Assembly: GCA_013416795.1 (NCBI GenBank)
Contig: RQSC01000854.1
Location: forward strand, 27,597-91,294
DNA: 63,698 bases
Reading direction: 5' to 3'
From: Prasinococcaceae sp. CCMP 1430
Lineage: Eukaryota > Plantae > Prasinodermophyta
A model generated the notes under the pieces. It saw only the letters and a program-made list of their open reading frames with translations. It was not told where the DNA came from and did no database searches. A program made the position numbers and the translations under genes. Of this stretch, positions 10,801 through 45,471 are shown piece after piece (the first letter of the stretch is position 1; each line of letters starts with the position of its first letter).

Positions 10801-11100
10801 NNNNNNNNNNNNNNNNNNNNNNNNNNNNNNNNNNNNNNNNNNNNNNNNNNNNNNNNNNNNNNNNNNNNNNNNNNNNNNNNNNNNNNNNNNNNNNNNNNNN
10901 NNNNNNNNNNNNNNNNNNNNNNNNNNNNNNNNNNNNNNNNNNNNNNNNNNNNNNNNNNNNNNNNNNNNNNNNNNNNNNNNNNNNNNNNNNNNNNNNNNNN
11001 NNNNNNNNNNNNNNNNNNNNNNNNNNNNNNNNNNNNNNNNNNNNNNNNNNNNNNNNNNNNNNNNNNNNNNNNNNNNNNNNNNNNNNNNNNNNNNNNNNNN
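10801..11100. other. Assembly gap (N run)
   Basis: 300 N. Confidence 1.
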
Positions 11101-19756: not shown

Positions 19757-21073
19757 CTAGCTCGGCGCGTCAGCCGCGGGCCTCCGCAGCCTCTGTGCGA
19801 GCGTGTCATTGCCATCGACGGCGCCCGCGGTGCGCGGCCTCCGGGGGGGCGAGCGTGGGCGCAGCGTGCCGGCGGTGTCTGGCCTCGCCCCCCCAGCAGT
19901 GCTCGGCCTGGACTTCGCCGCGGTGCTCGGTCTCGAACCGGTTACGCTGCCTGGCTGGGCGGACAGAAGGACGTCTTCAGTCTTCTGTCTGAGCTCCTTC
20001 ACGGCAGCGTCCCCCACCGCTGCAAGCTCGCGCACCTCCTGACGGCGCGCAGTGCCCTCCCGCAGCACTTTATCGCGCTGTCTCCGAAGGTTGCTCGAGG
20101 CCTCGGCGACCACTGCATCGCCTGCCGTGCCCAGTTCGGCGAGCGGGTCCATGTGCAATTGCAGCGCTGCTCGAAGCTGCTCGGCGTCCCCCGCCCGTAT
20201 GACCGGGTCGACCTCATCGAAGTCGCCGTCCGTGCCGTCGCCATCGCTGTGACCCTGAACATGATCATGTCCCCCCCTTGCGTGCTGTTCGGCCTCGCCG
20301 GTGGCCGCCGGCTCCTCCTCCATTCCCGCCGTTGCACAGCTTGCTGGTGCGTGGAGAGTGGCCCCCCGCCCGTCGTCGTCGCCAACTTGCCCGGCGCTCT
20401 CGCGCTCTGCCTCATCCACGTCCCTCTTGTCCAGGACTTTCAATTTGGGCAACGCTGCGATGAGCTTTGCGCGGCTGTCAGGTGCTGCACCGAAGCCGTT
20501 GCCCGCACGAAGATCAGCGAAAGCCAGCGTGGGTGGCAACTCGGCGAGCGCGAGCGCGCGCATGGCGTTGTCCGTGACGTCGAGGAAGAGCAGATTCGGC
20601 AGGTCTGCAATTCCCTTGAGGTTCTCGAGGCGGTTGCCAGCCGCGCACACGAATCGTAGTGTCGGCAGGTCTGCCAGCGGGGCGAGAGTGGTGAGACGGT
20701 TGTGCTGCACGTACAGGTTGGTGAGCGCTTGCATTGGTCGCAGCAGCGTGCCGAGCGACGTGATGCGCTCGCGGTCGAGGTGTGCGTTGGTGACCCTTGC
20801 GAGTGCGTGTCGCATCGCATCGGCATCGGATGCCTCGTCATCGACGAAATCCTCGGGTAGGCACCGGTCGAGCAGCACCTCCTCGGAAAGCGGCCCACCC
20901 GGCAACGCGGCGGCCTCGGCCAGCACCAGCTCGAAGGCCTGCATCTCAGTGAGCGCCTCGTCCCCCCCCTCCTGCTCCTCCTCCACGCTGCTCGCGGCGA
21001 TTGGTGCGCGGCGGTCGCCTTCGATCGCGGTTCCCTCCCTTTGCGGGCTGACCGCCTCCGCGTTGGGCGCCAT
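19757..21073 (-). CDS. Leucine-rich repeat protein, LRRC46-like
   Basis: HLDRERITSL..LTNLYVQHNRL..LRFVCAAGNRL..LLFLDVTDN followed by LRRcap LPKLKVLD. Confidence 0.8.
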   Translation of the reverse strand: MAPNAEAVSPQREGTAIEGDRRAPIAASSVEEEQEGGDEALTEMQAFELVLAEAAALPGGPLSEEVLLDRCLPEDFVDDEASDADAMRHALARVTNAHLDRERITSLGTLLRPMQALTNLYVQHNRLTTLAPLADLPTLRFVCAAGNRLENLKGIADLPNLLFLDVTDNAMRALALAELPPTLAFADLRAGNGFGAAPDSRAKLIAALPKLKVLDKRDVDEAERESAGQVGDDDGRGATLHAPASCATAGMEEEPAATGEAEQHARGGHDHVQGHSDGDGTDGDFDEVDPVIRAGDAEQLRAALQLHMDPLAELGTAGDAVVAEASSNLRRQRDKVLREGTARRQEVRELAAVGDAAVKELRQKTEDVLLSAQPGSVTGSRPSTAAKSRPSTAGGARPDTAGTLRPRSPPRRPRTAGAVDGNDTLAQRLRRPAADAPS

Positions 21074-21445: not shown

Positions 21446-21481
21446 CAAACCAAACCAAACCAAACCAAACCAAACCAAACC
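21446..21481. repeat. (CCAAA)n microsatellite in a divergent intergenic region
   Basis: About 7 perfect copies visible. Confidence 0.95.
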
Positions 21482-21740
21482 GTAACCTGACTTAGGGTCA
21501 TTCCTGTGGCCCACACCATTTGCGCCGACTCCGCATCCACTCGGCGCGCATCGACACTTCGTTTCTACGTGACCTCGCCGAGTCATCGGAAGGTTGCCAA
21601 ACCCTCTTTTTTCCATGGATATTTGCGAGGGACTGCGACCATCAAACGTCTCTCTGCGGGGCCCGTGGGGGGCGCGCGGATTCTCCTGGACCCGGGACGC
21701 GCGGATCCGCACCGGTTCTCTCGTTCTGCGTTTTTTAGAG

Positions 21741-23350
21741 ATGGGGTTTGATGATGATGCGAGCGCGCACGCGTGGCGAAAGTGGCGGGCGGAAAGCGCG
21801 CGTCGCGCGGCGCTGGCGCTGGCGGCGCGGGCGCGCGCAACCGCGCGGAGGGCCGCCGCCGCGAGAGCGAGCTCCGCCGGCGCGAGCTCCCGCGCCGGCG
21901 CCGCGAGGAGCGCTACGAGGAGCGATACGACCCCTACGAGGAGCGCTACGACCCTTACGAGGAGCGATACGACTCCTACGAGCAGCGATACGAGCCCTAC
22001 GAGGAGCGCTACGAGGACCGGTACGAGCGGCGCCGCGAGGGGCGCGACGAGGCGCGGTACGTGCGCGCGGGCGTCGCGCGAAAGTGCCGCGCCATCACTC
22101 CGCATGCGTTTTTGAATAGTGACCGCCCGCGTGGCGGTCCCGCGCAAAAGCCGCGGGGCGGGGGTGGTGGGTTGGGGGGGAAGCTGCGGAGGGGAAGGGG
22201 GTGGGTGATGCGGGGTGGGCGGCGTGCGGGTGGGGTGCGGCGCGCCGCGGCGAGAGCTCGGGAAGGGGATTGGGAGGAAGATCGGGGTGGGTGCGTGGGG
22301 ACGCGCTTGCCGGGGCGGCGAAGCGCGCGGGCGCACGAGAGCGTGCCGCCAACAAATGCGCGCCCAAGAAGCGCGGGGGTTGTCGGGCGCGGCCCAAGCC
22401 TGGGGGCGGAGCTCAGGGCATGCATGCTGGTGCTCATGCACCCCGCCTTTCTTTTCGCCGCTGGCGGTGCCGCGCAGCGTTGCGCTGCGTTGCGCCGCAC
22501 AACTCATCCCACCCAGCCCTGCTCCTCACGGACCCTGCGCATGCACCGTTGTTGCGTTGCGCTTGGTGCTGACTGTCTCTGCATGCTGCCTCGACTGTTC
22601 CGTCGCGCTGGGTACCCCGCTCTACCTCCTCTGATCCTCAACTCAACCCACCCACCTACGCGCGTGTCCGAACAGCTGCCACGCGCGCCATGTGGGGCCG
22701 TGGCGAGCAAACGGAGGCTGAGCACAACTACGTTGTGCTGTGGCCGACGTCGTTCAGCGAGGTGCGCGGCGCCGCTTCGCCCTGCGCGTACTGCGCTCGA
22801 GCGAGCGCAGGCGCAAGTGAGCGAGAGGGCGCGCTGGCGCGCTCGCTTGATCGCTGTCATGCCCGCTCGTTGGCGCCTTCCTGACAACCGCTCGTCCCCT
22901 GGTCTGTCGCGCCTCGTTCGCCGCTTCGCGACCCCCGCAACCTGTGTTGTGCACGCTCGGCAGTGTGCGAGTGCCATCTCGCAGCTCAAGGAGGGCAGCA
23001 CGGTGGTGATCAACCTATCGGCTATCGGCAGCGTGGATGAGCAGCAGCGCTCCATCGACTTCGTGGCGGGGGGGTGCTACGCGATGGACGGCCACCAGGA
23101 GTGCCTCGCGGAGGGCGTCTTCCTCTTCGCGCCCAGCGACATGCCAGTCGCCACGGCCAGCTCGCGGCGAGATGCGCTCGTATCGCTTGCGAAGGTGGGT
23201 GGAGACGAACACGGGGAGATCGACCAGCAACACATGCAGCAGCACATGCAGCAGGAGCAGCAGCAGCAGGACTTCGGCGCGGAGCAACCGCCTCGGCAGC
23301 ACGGAGGGCACGACAGCGCGGGTAGCCACCCACCCGGCGCAACATACTGA
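21741..23350 (+). CDS. sepF: Nuclear-encoded cyanobacterial-type SepF (FtsZ membrane anchor). Exons ~21741-22056 (frame uncertain), 22676-22761, 22964-23350
   Basis: Spliced core YVVLWPTSFSE|CASAISQLKEGSTVVINL...QQRSIDFVAGGCYAMDGHQECLAEGVFLFAPS matches the cyanobacterial SepF consensus (EPRSFEE..ALRERKSVVLNL..AQRAVDFVAGG.YA.DGHQER.GE.IFLFTP). Canonical splice sites GAG|GTGCGC and GCAG|TGT. Confidence 0.88.
21905..22030 (+). repeat. Imperfect 21-nt tandem repeat (TACGAGGAGCGCTACGACCCC-like; YEERYDP in one frame)
   Basis: About 5 degenerate units visible. Confidence 0.85.
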
Positions 23351-23829: not shown

Positions 23830-24290
23830 ATGGACGCGTGCATGCGCGCGACACGCGTCGCTGGGTCCGTCGCTGTCGCCTGCGTTTTGATGGCGCCGCG
23901 TTCCCCCGGCGGTCTTTGGTTGGCCTCGCGCACTCTCGAGTCGCTCGCGCTTGGGCCGCGCTCCTCCCCTCCCCAACACCACCAACAGCAACAACACCCC
24001 GCCGAGTACTGCGCGTCGCTGTCCTCCGTGCGCGCGGCCGCCCGCCGCATCGCGCCCCACGTGCGCCGCACGCCCGTGCTGCGCTCCCCCCGGCTCGACG
24101 CCCTCACCCCCACCGAGGCGCGCCTGTACTTCAAGGCGGAGGCGCTGCAGGTGTCGGGCTCGTTCAAGTACCGTGGGGCGTGCAACGCGGTGTTCTCCCT
24201 GTCCGCGCGCGACGCCGCGCGCGGCGTGACGACGCACAGCAGCGGCAACCACGCGGCGGCGCTCGCGGCGGCGGCCGCGGCGAAAGGGGG
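23830..24290 (+). pseudogene. Serine racemase/threonine dehydratase family (PLP fold II), N-terminal part only; truncated or misassembled
   Basis: VRRTPVLRS, LYFKAEALQVSGSFKYRGACNA (PLP lysine motif), GVTTHSSGNHAAALA. Similarity ends at a poly-G tract and the remainder is not found. Confidence 0.75.
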
Positions 24291-24666
24291 GGGGAGCCGC
24301 GCGTGGGGGCGGAAGGGGAGGGGGGGGGAGCGAGAGAGGAACGCGGTGGCTGTGCTTGCGATCGCGCTTGTGCGAGCGTGCTTGTGCATGCGTGCGTGTG
24401 TCGCCGTGGGAGCAAGGGCGCGGCAGTGCGCGGCGACCGCGCGCGCGCGCGCGCGGCCCGCTGCTGCCAGATCGCGCGCACCCGGCGCTCGGCAGCGCAG
24501 ACGTTCGCGCGCGGCGGCTCAGAACGCACGCCCGGCGCGGCGGGTGCGCGGGCGGGCGCAGGCGGGTGCGCACAGAGGGCTTGGCGAGGGGGTGTGACAG
24601 CTGGCTCAGCTACACTGCGCCGACCCAACGTCACGCAGTCGCTGACCGCCACCAGCGACGCCCGCA

Positions 24667-27630
24667 ATGGGCTCGGCGGAGGCGACCGATCGCGTGCGCG
24701 TGTATGCGCGCGTGCGACCGGCCTCGCTCAGGGATGGCCCAGCGGTGGTGAGTGCGAGTGAGGACAGGCGCACGCTCATCTTCGGCAAGGGGTGCAACCC
24801 CGCGGGCGGAAACCTCGAGGCGGAAGGTCTGGAGGGCGCTGGCGCGCCCTCGCACGGGGCGACCGCCGGCGGCCGCGCCGCCGCCGGCCGCACGTTTGAA
24901 TACGACCGCGTGTTCGGCGGCGACACCACGCAGGCGGAAGTCTTCGACGAGCTCGGAGCACCGCTGCTGGCGGACGTGCTGGCAGGCTACGACGCGTGTG
25001 CGTTGGCGTACGGGCAGACCGGCGCTGGGAAGACGCACTCCCTGCTCGCGACAGGAGATAAGGACAAGGACGGCGCCGGAGCGGGCCTCCTGCCCCGGCT
25101 GGCTGCCGGCCTCTTCGTGGGCGTCGAGTGCGACCCGCGGCATGTGTACAGCGTGTCGGTGTCGATGTGCCAAATATACTGTGAGCAGATCGATGATCTG
25201 CTGAAGCCCAAGAACACGAACATGCGGCTCGTGCAGACGCACGACGCCGAGGGCGGGGGCGGCTGGGAGGTCAAGGGGCTGAGCTGGTACGAGTGCAAAA
25301 GCGCCGACTTCCTACTGAGCGTCATCCGCAACGGCCAGCGGCGGATCACCTACGCTGAAACAAGCCTCAACAAACACTCGTCTCGTGCGCACGCCGTCAT
25401 ACAGCTTCGAGTCATGCGGCGCAGGCGCATGGCCGCGAAGCAGGGCAAGAATCTGCAAGCCAGCTTGGAGAGGCAGGACAGCGCCAAGCGCGCGGTCCGC
25501 GCGACGCGCGGTCGGCTCACGGTGGTCGACCTGGCGGGCAGCGAGCGCGTCAAGCGCTCACTGGCGGAGGGAGCGCGCATGCGCGAGGCCCAGAACATCA
25601 ACACGTCGCTGTTTGCCTTCGGCAAGGTGGTGAATGCTTTGGCAACGCGCGCACCGCACGTGCCCTTCCGGGACTCGGTGCTCACGCGCCTGCTGGAGGA
25701 CCGAATGCGTGGCAACTGCAACACGCGGATGCTCGTGTGCGTGTCGCCCTCGGCCGCGTCGGCGGGCGAGAGCTTGGGCACTGCCGAGTTCGCCGCGCGC
25801 GCGATGCGCATCGCGGTGGATGCGAGCGTGAACGAGACAGAGATGCTGGTGGACGCCCGCGACCTCGTCGGCGACCTCGCTGTGGGCATGCTGCGAGACA
25901 GCATGGCCGCCGCCTCCGACGCAGAGATCTCGCAGCTGGAGGCCGCCCTCGCCGACGAGGAGGCCAAGCGCATGGGCGCCGAGGCGCGCCTGCAGATGGA
26001 GGCGCGAGCGCTTCGCGAGGCGTGCGAGGAGGTCATGGCGCACGAGCAGGAGGCTGCCATCGCCAGCGAGAGGGCGCACAAGGCAGAAGCTGCGGCCGCC
26101 GAGGCGCTGCGTCTCGCGCAAGATGCGGCGACCGACGCACAGGACGCCAAGAGGGATGCGGACGAGGCGACGCACGCGGCGGATGAGGCGCGCGCAGAGT
26201 GTGCGCAGTGGAAGCTGCGCGCGGAAGGGGCGGAACGAGAGCGCGGCGAAGCGCTGCGCTCGGCTGCATCTGCGGAGGTCGGCGCCGACACGCTGCGCGA
26301 AGAGTGCGCCGCATTGCGCGCGTCGGTATTGCGCGAGAAGGAGCGCTCGAGCGCGCTCGAGGCGGCGCTCGCACGCTCTGCGGAGACGACCTCGCGCGCG
26401 CATGAGCAGCTCGCGCGGGCGAGAGAGGTGTCTGCTGCTGGAGCGGAAGCTGCGCAGGAGGAGCTGAGCCTGGTGCACGCTGAGCTCGAGCACTCGCGCT
26501 CGGACGCAGCAGGCGCCCTCGAAAGCGCGCGTGCAGAGCGTCGCCGCGCAGACGTGGCCGAGGCCACCGCGGGCGAGCTCGCACGCGAGGCCAGGGCAGC
26601 GCATGTCGACCTCCGCCAGGCGGCCGCCGAATGTGCCGCGACCGCGAATGCGCTGCGTGCTGCGCGCCGCTCAGCGTCGGAGGCGGCCGACAAGGTTCGG
26701 CGCGCGGAAATCGCGCTCGAACAGGCATACGACGCCGCCGGCGAAGCCGAACAGGGGACCATCGACGCGCTCAAGGCAGAACTGGCAGGCACACAGCTTG
26801 AGGTGCGCCGCCTGGAACAGCGCGCCACGGAAGAAGAGGAGGCGTACGCCGTAGCGCGTGCGCGCATCACGAGCCTGGTTCATGACCTTAGCCGCGAAGG
26901 CTTCGAGTACCGCGCAAAGGTATCGGGGGATGCCGCCGCCGCCAAGCGCTCGCTGGACGCCACGCGAGGGCGCGTAGTGGACCTCGAGGAGACACTGGCG
27001 GGCGCCGAAGCAATCAGAAACGCGCTGCGCACCAGCGCGACTGGAGCAGAGGCGCAGGCGGCCATGTGGCGTTCGGCGGCGGTGGCAGCGGCGCACTCGG
27101 GCGTGCTGACCAGCAAACACTGCCGGGACGGCAAGCAGAGGCTCAGGGTGGTGCGCATCGTGCCGGGCGACGGAGCCGCAGACGGGTGTGACGGTGCGCG
27201 TGTCGAGTGGGCGTCGGTTGGGCCCTTCAAGCGCGGTGTGGGCCTTTCGGAGGCGGCAGTGTTGCCAGAGGCTGCGGAGGCGGCCGGCGCCGATCCTCAT
27301 TCGCCGCGCGCATCGAGCGCGCTCGTGCGCCTGAGCACGGCCTCCAGGCTTCTCGAGCTGGACTTTGGCGCGCCGGCGTGCGCGGCGGTGGCGCACGCGG
27401 CGCTCGAGGCGCTCGGGGTGGCGTCCCTGGTGGGCGAGCCGCAGCTCACGCCGGACTCAGCGGCGAGCGCGGGCCTCAGGAGCGCCCCGTGGGCCCCACC
27501 CGCCCACGAGCCCGGCTCTCCCGCCGGCGCTCCCCCCGCGGACGTCTCGGCGATCGGCGCCGAAGCCAAGGCAACGGCAGCAGCGATGCTCGCGCCACCT
27601 ATCCATGTGTCGCCCTGCAAGGCAGGCTAG
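24667..27630 (+). CDS. N-terminal motor kinesin with long coiled coil and C-terminal PH-like domain
   Basis: VRVYARVRP, AYGQTGAGKTH (P-loop), NKHSSRAH, VDLAGSER, HVPFRDSVLTRLL; Ala/Glu/Arg coiled coil. Confidence 0.95.
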   Translation: MGSAEATDRVRVYARVRPASLRDGPAVVSASEDRRTLIFGKGCNPAGGNLEAEGLEGAGAPSHGATAGGRAAAGRTFEYDRVFGGDTTQAEVFDELGAPLLADVLAGYDACALAYGQTGAGKTHSLLATGDKDKDGAGAGLLPRLAAGLFVGVECDPRHVYSVSVSMCQIYCEQIDDLLKPKNTNMRLVQTHDAEGGGGWEVKGLSWYECKSADFLLSVIRNGQRRITYAETSLNKHSSRAHAVIQLRVMRRRRMAAKQGKNLQASLERQDSAKRAVRATRGRLTVVDLAGSERVKRSLAEGARMREAQNINTSLFAFGKVVNALATRAPHVPFRDSVLTRLLEDRMRGNCNTRMLVCVSPSAASAGESLGTAEFAARAMRIAVDASVNETEMLVDARDLVGDLAVGMLRDSMAAASDAEISQLEAALADEEAKRMGAEARLQMEARALREACEEVMAHEQEAAIASERAHKAEAAAAEALRLAQDAATDAQDAKRDADEATHAADEARAECAQWKLRAEGAERERGEALRSAASAEVGADTLREECAALRASVLREKERSSALEAALARSAETTSRAHEQLARAREVSAAGAEAAQEELSLVHAELEHSRSDAAGALESARAERRRADVAEATAGELAREARAAHVDLRQAAAECAATANALRAARRSASEAADKVRRAEIALEQAYDAAGEAEQGTIDALKAELAGTQLEVRRLEQRATEEEEAYAVARARITSLVHDLSREGFEYRAKVSGDAAAAKRSLDATRGRVVDLEETLAGAEAIRNALRTSATGAEAQAAMWRSAAVAAAHSGVLTSKHCRDGKQRLRVVRIVPGDGAADGCDGARVEWASVGPFKRGVGLSEAAVLPEAAEAAGADPHSPRASSALVRLSTASRLLELDFGAPACAAVAHAALEALGVASLVGEPQLTPDSAASAGLRSAPWAPPAHEPGSPAGAPPADVSAIGAEAKATAAAMLAPPIHVSPCKAG

Positions 27631-45088: not shown

Positions 45089-45471
45089 NNNNNNNNNNNN
45101 NNNNNNNNNNNNNNNNNNNNNNNNNNNNNNNNNNNNNNNNNNNNNNNNNNNNNNNNNNNNNNNNNNNNNNNNNNNNNNNNNNNNNNNNNNNNNNNNNNNN
45201 NNNNNNNNNNNNNNNNNNNNNNNNNNNNNNNNNNNNNNNNNNNNNNNNNNNNNNNNNNNNNNNNNNNNNNNNNNNNNNNNNNNNNNNNNNNNNNNNNNNN
45301 NNNNNNNNNNNNNNNNNNNNNNNNNNNNNNNNNNNNNNNNNNNNNNNNNNNNNNNNNNNNNNNNNNNNNNNNNNNNNNNNNNNNNNNNNNNNNNNNNNNN
45401 NNNNNNNNNNNNNNNNNNNNNNNNNNNNNNNNNNNNNNNNNNNNNNNNNNNNNNNNNNNNNNNNNNNNNNN
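45089..45471. other. Assembly gap (N run)
   Basis: Continuous Ns. Confidence 1.

What the first reader, a model, noticed from the sequence alone, without database searches (positions are those of the whole stretch)
21741..23350. Nuclear, spliced, cyanobacterial-type SepF in a green-lineage eukaryote
Seen: a SepF core rebuilt across a canonical intron, so it is not bacterial contamination. Known: SepF anchors and bundles FtsZ in cyanobacteria, Gram-positive bacteria and archaea. It is not part of the textbook green plastid division set (FtsZ1/2, ARC6, Min, DRP5B); as I recall, it is reported mainly from glaucophyte plastid DNA. Inference: endosymbiotic gene transfer preserving an ancestral SepF-anchored plastid Z-ring. 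This is the best candidate for an undescribed system in the window.
Basis: partly seen in the sequence, partly recalled or inferred. Interest (0 to 1): 0.88.

Follow-up and report, generated by a model that had tools for sequence, protein, structure and literature searches.

The report
Nuclear SepF gene in green algae
The marine green alga Prasinoderma coloniale, and several other early-branching green algae, keep in their nuclear DNA a working, spliced copy of the bacterial cell-division gene SepF, which the chloroplast-division papers checked here list only in glaucophytes or treat as lost; it most likely helps bundle the chloroplast's division ring, but it lacks the usual membrane anchor and its function is untested.

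Summary
Real gene. Exon 22964-23350 hits Pfam SepF (9e-15), and the modelled fold matches B. subtilis SepF (Z 14.4). Two transcript assemblies splice intron 22762-22963, and one supports intron 22057-22675. All 8 exonic variants in wild contigs are synonymous. The host is Prasinoderma coloniale. Orthologs occur in Klebsormidium, Chlorokybus, Spirogloea, Nephroselmis, Pycnococcus, Pseudoscourfieldia and uncultured algae. They form one clade (99/90), and Klebsormidium shares the intron position, which points to one ancient transfer, probably from the plastid ancestor.

Two corrections. (1) 21840-22039 is most likely an assembly patch from another locus, so the 5' end is unreliable. (2) The N-terminal membrane helix of bacterial SepF is replaced by a transit-peptide-like leader, so 'SepF-anchored' is not shown. 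FtsZ-binding and polymerisation residues (B. subtilis F126, G109) are kept. 12 of 16 green sequences carry a new C-terminal amphipathic motif, a candidate relocated anchor.

Databases already name these proteins SepF. I found no paper on them, and a 2025 paper calls SepF lost in plastid evolution. The scan noted a nuclear SepF before, on another piece of this genome (s1-389846).

The parts
22040..22056 (+). 3' end of the true exon 1 (part of an Ala/Arg/Gly-rich leader); the rest of this exon is missing from the window
   Evidence: X15 loose end matches 22040-22055; wild contigs L003-L005 and L010 match from 22040 on and differ upstream
22057..22675 (+). intron 1, GT..AG, 619 nt, phase 1
   Evidence: RNA loose end; retained in transcript L024; 5.5 variable sites per 100 nt in wild contigs
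22676..22761 (+). exon 2: end of leader (..ATRA), Met 22690 (annotated start, probable start of the mature protein), strand beta-1 and the W-P-T-S-F-S-E motif
   Evidence: X15 contig 22675-22759; P0126 and P0276; 2 variants, both synonymous
22762..22963 (+). intron 2, GT..AG, 202 nt, phase 0 after F-S-E; same position as in Klebsormidium
   Evidence: RNA joint; L024; Klebsormidium gag|gtcagg..cag|gtc
22964..23167 (+). exon 3, SepF core; G60 (23069-23071) = B. subtilis G109; F77 (23120-23122) = B. subtilis F126 / C. glutamicum F131; C71 (23102-23104) stands where C. glutamicum has K125
   Evidence: Pfam; PDB alignments; model and fold match; residue roles from PMC5717166 and PMC7118173
23168..23200 (+). 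green-lineage C-terminal amphipathic motif (RDALVSLAKVG), candidate relocated membrane anchor or extra packing helix
   Evidence: 12 of 16 green rows, 0 of 232 bacterial rows, hydrophobic moment 0.48; helix 90-102 predicted at low confidence, pLDDT about 55
23201..23350 (+). low-complexity Q/H/G/P-rich tail and stop codon; transcript continues to about 23520
   Evidence: X15 contig continuous to 23458; L024 to 23520
21840..22039 (.). NOT part of the gene: 200-nt patch with a 21-nt tandem repeat, most likely copied from another locus during assembly
   Evidence: X1 records 2, 5 and 7; RNA and wild contigs; repeat 21913-22014
   Evidence: X1 record 2 covers 21494-21839; no RNA depth here in three runs; homolog leaders have at most 10% D+E (19% in the probably truncated P0191)

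Best explanation
This is the Prasinoderma coloniale member of a green-lineage family of nuclear SepF genes that came from the plastid's cyanobacterial ancestor by one early gene transfer. SHOWN: spliced, transcribed, under purifying selection, SepF fold, one eukaryotic clade, intron position shared with a streptophyte. INFERRED: the protein is imported into the chloroplast stroma by an Ala/Arg-rich transit peptide that is cut just before the core. [quoted passage not shown] The bacterial N-terminal membrane helix was traded for the transit peptide, so it acts mainly as an FtsZ bundler and ring organiser. Tethering is then left to an ARC6/Ftn2-type protein or, possibly, to the new C-terminal amphipathic helix.
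For: Pfam SepF 9e-15. Model pLDDT 93-98 over residues 11-80, Z 14.4 and rmsd 1.2 A over 79 residues to 3ZIH; next unrelated fold Z 9.3. Splicing in two transcript assemblies. 8 of 8 exonic variants synonymous; exons 0.6-2.4 against introns 5.0-5.5 variable sites per 100 nt. Top homologs are Klebsormidium and Spirogloea (62-63%), then cyanobacteria (51-56%). Named hosts also include Chlorokybus, Nephroselmis, Pycnococcus and Pseudoscourfieldia. 13 eukaryotic rows form one clade, 99/90, present in 99% of bootstrap trees. Shared phase-0 intron with Klebsormidium. Leaders of the apparently full-length green homologs are 36-139 aa, rich in A/S/T/R, with 0-10% D+E, against 22% in the cyanobacterial N-terminal region. 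P. coloniale and the streptophyte algae encode all core peptidoglycan enzymes (PMC7455551), the setting in which Cyanophora keeps sepF (PMC4015805).
Against: No localisation or binding data. No transit-peptide predictor was available, and the true P. coloniale N-terminus is missing from the assembly. The bacterial sister is unresolved on 83 columns, and the bacterial rows were chosen by similarity to the green profile; Cyanophora plastid SepF was not identified in the set. The basic residue matching C. glutamicum K125 is lost in most green sequences (C, Y, T, M or A; R only in Nephroselmis), so the FtsZ contact may be weakened or changed. Moss has plastid peptidoglycan genes but no SepF in the published table, so the link to peptidoglycan is loose.
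Confidence: 0.72

Rival explanations
1. Full ancestral job retained with a moved anchor: the C-terminal amphipathic helix inserts into the inner envelope, so green SepF is still a direct membrane tether for FtsZ, in circularly rearranged form.
For: Motif in 12 of 16 green rows from distant lineages, at a variable distance (13-30 aa) from the core, like a tethered element; 0 of 232 bacterial rows; hydrophobic moment 0.23-0.56, against a mean of 0.44 for the cyanobacterial N-terminal helix. The model predicts a helix there that does not align with the C. glutamicum or B. subtilis structures, whose alignments end at residue 90-92.
Against: Absent from Klebsormidium, Spirogloea and two uncultured hosts. 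The pattern was written from the green sequences, which favours the 0 of 232. Helix pLDDT is only about 55. It may simply pack on the sheet like helix 3 of C. glutamicum SepF (PMC7118173), or be an oligomer or partner-binding helix.
Confidence: 0.3
2. A plastid protein of cyanobacterial origin that no longer works with FtsZ: it has been repurposed, for example to organise septal peptidoglycan synthesis or thylakoid partitioning through other partners.
For: Loss of the N-terminal anchor and of the K125-type residue; green-specific changes (W-P-x-x-F, an inserted residue and E-Q-Q-R in helix 2); retention in lineages with plastid-wall genes.
Against: Invariant D56, F57, G60, G67, F77 and P81 include the FtsZ-pocket and polymerisation residues; the fold is unchanged; no other SepF function is described in the papers read.
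Confidence: 0.15
3. The gene came by horizontal transfer from a free-living bacterium into an early green alga, not from the plastid ancestor.
For: The tree does not resolve the sister group. Red algae and land plants lack it in the published table. Patchy distribution.
Against: The nearest bacterial sequences are cyanobacterial where named, as is the nearest Atlas cluster. Cyanophora still carries sepF in its plastid genome, so the endosymbiont brought the gene in. One clade spans all three green phyla.
Confidence: 0.1
4. Bacterial contamination, pseudogene or assembly artefact.
For: The assembly is patched right beside the gene (21840-22039 and probably 23967-24255).
Against: Spliced RNA, spliceosomal introns, synonymous-only variation in 11 wild contigs, orthologs in other algal nuclear genomes, eukaryotic neighbours (LRR gene, kinesin), and no relative found by the scan of prokaryotic genomes with the algal peptides.
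Confidence: 0.01

Closest known systems
Cyanobacterial SepF (Cdv2/YlmF; Synechocystis Slr2073, Synechococcus Synpcc7942_2059)
   Same: PF04472 core with the D-F-V-A-G-G-x-x-A-x-D-G-H-Q-E signature, 51-56% identity; likely direct source. Known to localise at mid-cell and stimulate FtsZ assembly (PMC7766704).
   Different: Nuclear and spliced; N-terminal amphipathic helix and acidic linker replaced by a basic leader; W-P instead of E-P; one extra residue before helix 2; new C-terminal motif.
Cyanophora paradoxa plastid-encoded sepF
   Same: The only eukaryotic SepF in the plastid-division papers read here (PMC4015805 text and Table S1; PMC6330054); host with plastid peptidoglycan.
   Different: Plastid-encoded, glaucophyte, restricted to Cyanophora species. 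Its sequence was not identified in my data, so it was not compared directly.
Bacillus subtilis / Corynebacterium glutamicum SepF (3ZIH, 6SCP/6SAT)
   Same: Same fold (Z 13.5-14.4); G109 and F126/F131 equivalents conserved.
   Different: 25-28% identity; K125 equivalent is Cys; no N-terminal membrane helix.
Database-annotated green-algal SepF (Klebsormidium KFL_000090060; Chlorokybus Chlat1 4981; Spirogloea SM000109S14133; Nephroselmis MMETSP0034; Pycnococcus XRB04313.1; Pseudoscourfieldia XRB17413.1)
   Same: Same clade, same domain plan (leader plus core); Klebsormidium shares the intron.
   Different: Only automatic names. No functional or evolutionary description was found in the library.
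ARC6/Ftn2(ZipN), the textbook plastid FtsZ tether
   Same: Binds the FtsZ C-terminal tail at the division site (established knowledge; not tested here).
   Different: Unrelated fold, transmembrane. Green SepF would be an additional, soluble or peripheral partner.

Membership tests
SepF (PF04472) | C-terminal SepF core above the Pfam gathering score | tested here: met
   55.1 bits against cut-off 27 from exon 3 alone
SepF (PF04472) | beta-alpha-beta-alpha-beta-beta SepF fold | tested here: met
   AlphaFold model, Z 14.4, rmsd 1.2 A, 79 residues to 3ZIH; the top 12 rows are all SepF
SepF (PF04472) | Polymerisation glycine (B. subtilis G109) | tested here: met
   G60, invariant in 17 green rows
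SepF (PF04472) | FtsZ-tail pocket residues (B. subtilis F126 / C. glutamicum F131 and K125) | tested here: inconclusive
   F77 invariant; the K125 position is Cys here and non-basic in most green rows
SepF (PF04472) | N-terminal amphipathic membrane helix plus disordered linker | tested here: not met
   Green homologs have a basic, non-acidic leader and only a short stretch (13 aa here) between the probable mature start and beta-1. This lowers 'canonical membrane-anchoring SepF', not 'SepF-domain protein'.
SepF (PF04472) | Binds and bundles FtsZ; localises to the division site | not testable with these tools
   needs biochemistry and microscopy
Nuclear plastid-division protein of endosymbiotic origin | Nuclear, spliced, expressed gene | tested here: met
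Nuclear plastid-division protein of endosymbiotic origin | N-terminal chloroplast transit peptide | tested here: inconclusive
   Composition of homolog leaders fits; about 18 residues of this gene's leader are visible; the full N-terminus is lost in the assembly patch; no predictor was run
Nuclear plastid-division protein of endosymbiotic origin | Phylogeny nests within cyanobacteria / with Cyanophora | tested here: inconclusive
   Green clade 99/90, but in an open polytomy with cyanobacterial and other bacterial SepF; nearest by similarity are cyanobacterial

The most novel reading that the evidence does not exclude
The last common ancestor of all green plants divided its walled chloroplast with a SepF-organised FtsZ ring. 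On transfer to the nucleus, SepF lost its N-terminal membrane helix to the transit peptide and gained a new C-terminal amphipathic anchor. This rearranged tether still works in Prasinoderma and several prasinophytes, and it has been missed in plastid-division inventories.
Probability: 0.25. Interest if true: 0.8.

Novelty: new variant of a known kind. Interest (0 to 1): 0.6.

Why it matters
[quoted passage not shown] A conserved nuclear SepF in Prasinodermophyta, prasinophyte Chlorophyta and streptophyte algae up to Zygnematophyceae (the sister group of land plants, from established knowledge) would move that loss to several late, separate events. It would add a component to the ancestral green plastid divisome. 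It makes a long-standing question testable: how the cyanobacterial FtsZ tethers (SepF, Ftn2) were handed over to the ARC6/PARC6/PDV system, and whether that was tied to the plastid wall. The protein is small and soluble, so binding and complementation tests are easy.

Tried and rejected
NCBIfam gave no hit for either exon, and exon 2 alone is too short for Pfam. The 525-aa ORF 21773-23350 is rejected as the product: it reads through both introns, and RNA shows splicing. The ERYEERYDPY repeat was first considered a counterpart of the acidic cyanobacterial linker; it is rejected because it is in another frame and belongs to another locus.

Two exact DNA scans of JGI metagenome contigs, run to recover the true exon 1, found nothing. 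Wild contigs end within about 30 nt upstream of 22040, apart from L003, whose further upstream sequence disagrees with L004/L005 and looks chimeric. The scan of prokaryotic genomes with the algal protein found no relative; it uses exact peptide seeds, so this is weak evidence.

The single-sequence fold was poor (pLDDT 57) and was replaced by the alignment-based one. A homolog search with a neighbouring helicase showed only that the L013 host is a green-lineage eukaryote. Ten paper searches, eight of them on SepF and one on ycf50, found no description of nuclear green SepF. One review could not be fetched, the Klebsormidium genome supplement is not held, and the Prasinoderma genome paper and its supplements do not mention SepF. 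Subscription journals are not searched.

The spliced proteins used for the tree and fold (P0126, P0276) are database records. The true exon 1 has no reference and was left out.

Full report
OBSERVATION. The region holds a three-exon gene on the + strand. Exon 22964-23350 matches Pfam SepF at 55.1 bits (cut-off 27; E 9e-15). The exon 22676-22761 encodes the missing first strand and the P-x-x-F-x-E motif. A contig from RNA-type run X15 joins 22761 to 22964 across a 202-nt GT..AG intron, and a JGI transcript contig (L024) does the same at 100% identity and runs to 23520. The X15 contig's loose 5' end ends in the genomic letters 22040-22055, which supports a 619-nt first intron 22057-22675; L024 retains that intron. 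The spliced product from Met 22690 is in EukProt as Prasinoderma coloniale PRCOL_00000513-RA (P0126), which identifies the organism. That annotation lacks a leader and ends differently (..AKVSQC), whereas both transcripts read straight on to the stop at 23348-23350. In 11 wild metagenome contigs all 8 exonic variants are synonymous, and introns vary 2-9 times more than exons. The gene is real, nuclear, expressed and under purifying selection.

CORRECTION OF THE 5' END. In run X1, one contig matches 21494-21839 and then goes on for 59 other letters. Another matches from 22040 on and has 141 other letters before it. The stretch 21834-22061 sits inside a third contig with foreign flanks on both sides. 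The RNA loose end and wild contigs L003-L005 and L010 agree with each other, and not with the window, just upstream of 22040. So 21840-22039, a 21-nt tandem repeat that reads as ERYEERYDPY in a different frame, is most likely a gap-filling patch from another locus; a strain-specific insertion is not formally excluded. The assembly has N gaps, and a second such patch probably lies at 23967-24255. Wild contigs extend the leader to about 18 Ala/Arg/Gly-rich residues ending in ..ATRA before Met 22690. That matches ..AVARA before the same point in a close MMETSP homolog that has a 37-residue leader (P0282). ATG 21741 stays in frame either way, but its acidic start is unlike the homologs' leaders and no RNA covers it. 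Two DNA scans to recover the true exon 1 found nothing.

FAMILY. The best homologs of exon 3 are eukaryotic: Klebsormidium nitens KFL_000090060 (62%) and two Spirogloea muscicola models (63%), followed by cyanobacterial-type SepF at 51-56%. Further searches added Chlorokybus atmophyticus, Nephroselmis pyriformis, Pycnococcus provasolii and Pseudoscourfieldia marina, and several uncultured algae on contigs with eukaryotic neighbours. In a quick tree of 153 rows, 14 rows formed a clade at SH-aLRT 99. The four I had not labelled as eukaryotic turned out to carry the green-type motifs, and one cluster is named as Pycnococcus/Pseudoscourfieldia. In a careful tree, 13 green rows form one clade at 99/90, but the bacterial sister is unresolved on 83 columns, and the bacterial rows were chosen by similarity. 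Klebsormidium has a phase-0 intron after F-S-E, exactly where this gene has it. An uncultured alga (L026) has one a single base away, and the mis-spliced Spirogloea models break at the same motif (inference). One origin before the split of Prasinodermophyta, Chlorophyta and Streptophyta follows. The cyanobacterial nearest neighbours, and Cyanophora's plastid-encoded sepF, make endosymbiotic transfer the likeliest source, though the tree does not prove it. No land-plant or core-chlorophyte name appeared among the hits I could name. I did not name all 150 hits, but the published table also has blanks for Chlamydomonas, moss, Selaginella, Arabidopsis and Cyanidioschyzon.

ANATOMY AND MECHANISM. 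The model of residues 1-112 (118-row alignment) has pLDDT 93-98 over the core and matches B. subtilis SepF at Z 14.4, rmsd 1.2 A; all top 12 rows are SepF. G60 corresponds to B. subtilis G109, needed for polymerisation. F77 corresponds to F126 / C. glutamicum F131, needed for FtsZ binding. Both are invariant in the green rows. The position of C. glutamicum K125 is Cys here and non-basic in most green sequences. Bacterial SepF is anchored by an N-terminal amphipathic helix and a long linker (PMC7118173, PMC5717166). The apparently full-length green proteins have instead a 36-139-residue leader rich in A/S/T/R with 0-10% acidic residues (cyanobacterial N-terminal region: 22%), which looks like a chloroplast transit peptide (no predictor run). 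After cleavage, about 13 residues would precede the core, so the ancestral anchor is gone. Twelve of 16 green sequences carry a new motif after the core (RDALVSLAKVG here), amphipathic (moment 0.48) and not found in 232 bacterial rows. It is predicted as a helix at low confidence, and Klebsormidium, Spirogloea and two uncultured hosts lack it. The best-supported model, inferred and not shown, is a stromal SepF dimer or polymer that grips plastid FtsZ tails and bundles the Z-ring. Membrane tethering would be supplied by an ARC6/Ftn2-type protein, or possibly by the new C-terminal helix. P. coloniale and streptophyte algae encode all ten core peptidoglycan enzymes (PMC7455551), so a role in shaping a walled septum, as for B. 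subtilis SepF, is plausible. Moss keeps the wall genes without SepF, so the link is not strict.

WHAT IS KNOWN. GenBank and UniRef already give several of these proteins automatic SepF names, so their existence is on record. I found no paper that describes them. The DipM paper and the monoplastidy review mention SepF only for Cyanophora or algal plastid genomes, and a 2025 paper calls SepF lost in plastid evolution. A 2026 preprint includes SepF among the plastid-division proteins it screened for in a centrohelid, with no result given in the passage read. Most subscription journals are outside the library, so a prior mention cannot be excluded. This scan already noted a nuclear SepF on another piece indexed under the same genome (s1-389846) and reached a similar reading. 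That is not independent support, and I could not tell whether it is a paralog or a second copy of this locus.

VERDICT. A real and apparently undescribed variant of a known family: nuclear, probably plastid-targeted SepF of early green algae, with the ancestral membrane anchor lost and a candidate new one gained. Interest 0.6. Per the operators' note, exons were searched by reference and not joined by me; the spliced proteins used are database records, and the unreferenced true exon 1 was left out.

Noticed in passing
window 21840-22039: 200-nt patch holding a 21-nt tandem repeat that reads as an E/R/Y/D/P-rich peptide in another frame; run X1 places it in a different contig. It probably belongs to an unrelated gene elsewhere in the genome, and it has no Pfam hit.
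   Followed up: yes
window 23967-24255: An orphan exon with the start of a PALP (serine racemase / threonine dehydratase-like) domain (Pfam 1.5e-17). Five wild contigs have a different stretch of about 190 nt at this place, and I saw no continuation downstream. Probably a second assembly patch; other findings on this assembly may be affected by such patches at GC-rich gaps.
   Followed up: partly
window 23195-23350: The published model PRCOL_00000513 ends ..AKVSQC and has no leader, while two transcript assemblies read through to the stop at 23350. The reference annotation is probably incomplete at the 5' end and different at the 3' end.
   Followed up: partly
window 19757-21073 (-): Intron-less leucine-rich-repeat gene (LRR_4/LRR_9), divergent from SepF. 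The shared upstream region has an A-rich run, a (CAAAC)7 repeat at 21446-21481 and telo-box-like TTAGGG/AAACCCT words.
   Followed up: no
window 24646-27627 (+): Long open frame encoding a kinesin motor domain followed by probable coiled coil (identified by eye from the motifs, no profile search).
   Followed up: no
P0133/P0287, P0134/P0291, P0148, P0149; L013-L016: A fast-evolving, intron-less (in L013) SepF sub-clade from uncultured green picoalgae, with a conserved ERDPSxG-G motif before the core. It groups with Prasinoderma at 93/97 on a long branch; it could be a second paralog class or a long-branch artefact.
   Followed up: partly
L026:1500-2602: SepF gene of another 75%-GC alga whose intron lies one base upstream of the position shared by Prasinoderma and Klebsormidium (possible intron sliding).
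   Followed up: partly
P0130, P0186, P0192, P0254, P0261, P0265: Bacterial-type proteins in which a cyanobacterial-like SepF core is fused to other domains (a Ser/Thr kinase with two SepF repeats; CopG/RHH-like N-terminal stretches, judged by eye).
   Followed up: no
window 10801-11100 and 45089-45471: Unfilled N gaps of 300 and 383 nt, which suggest a scaffolded short-read assembly rather than the published PacBio one.
   Followed up: no
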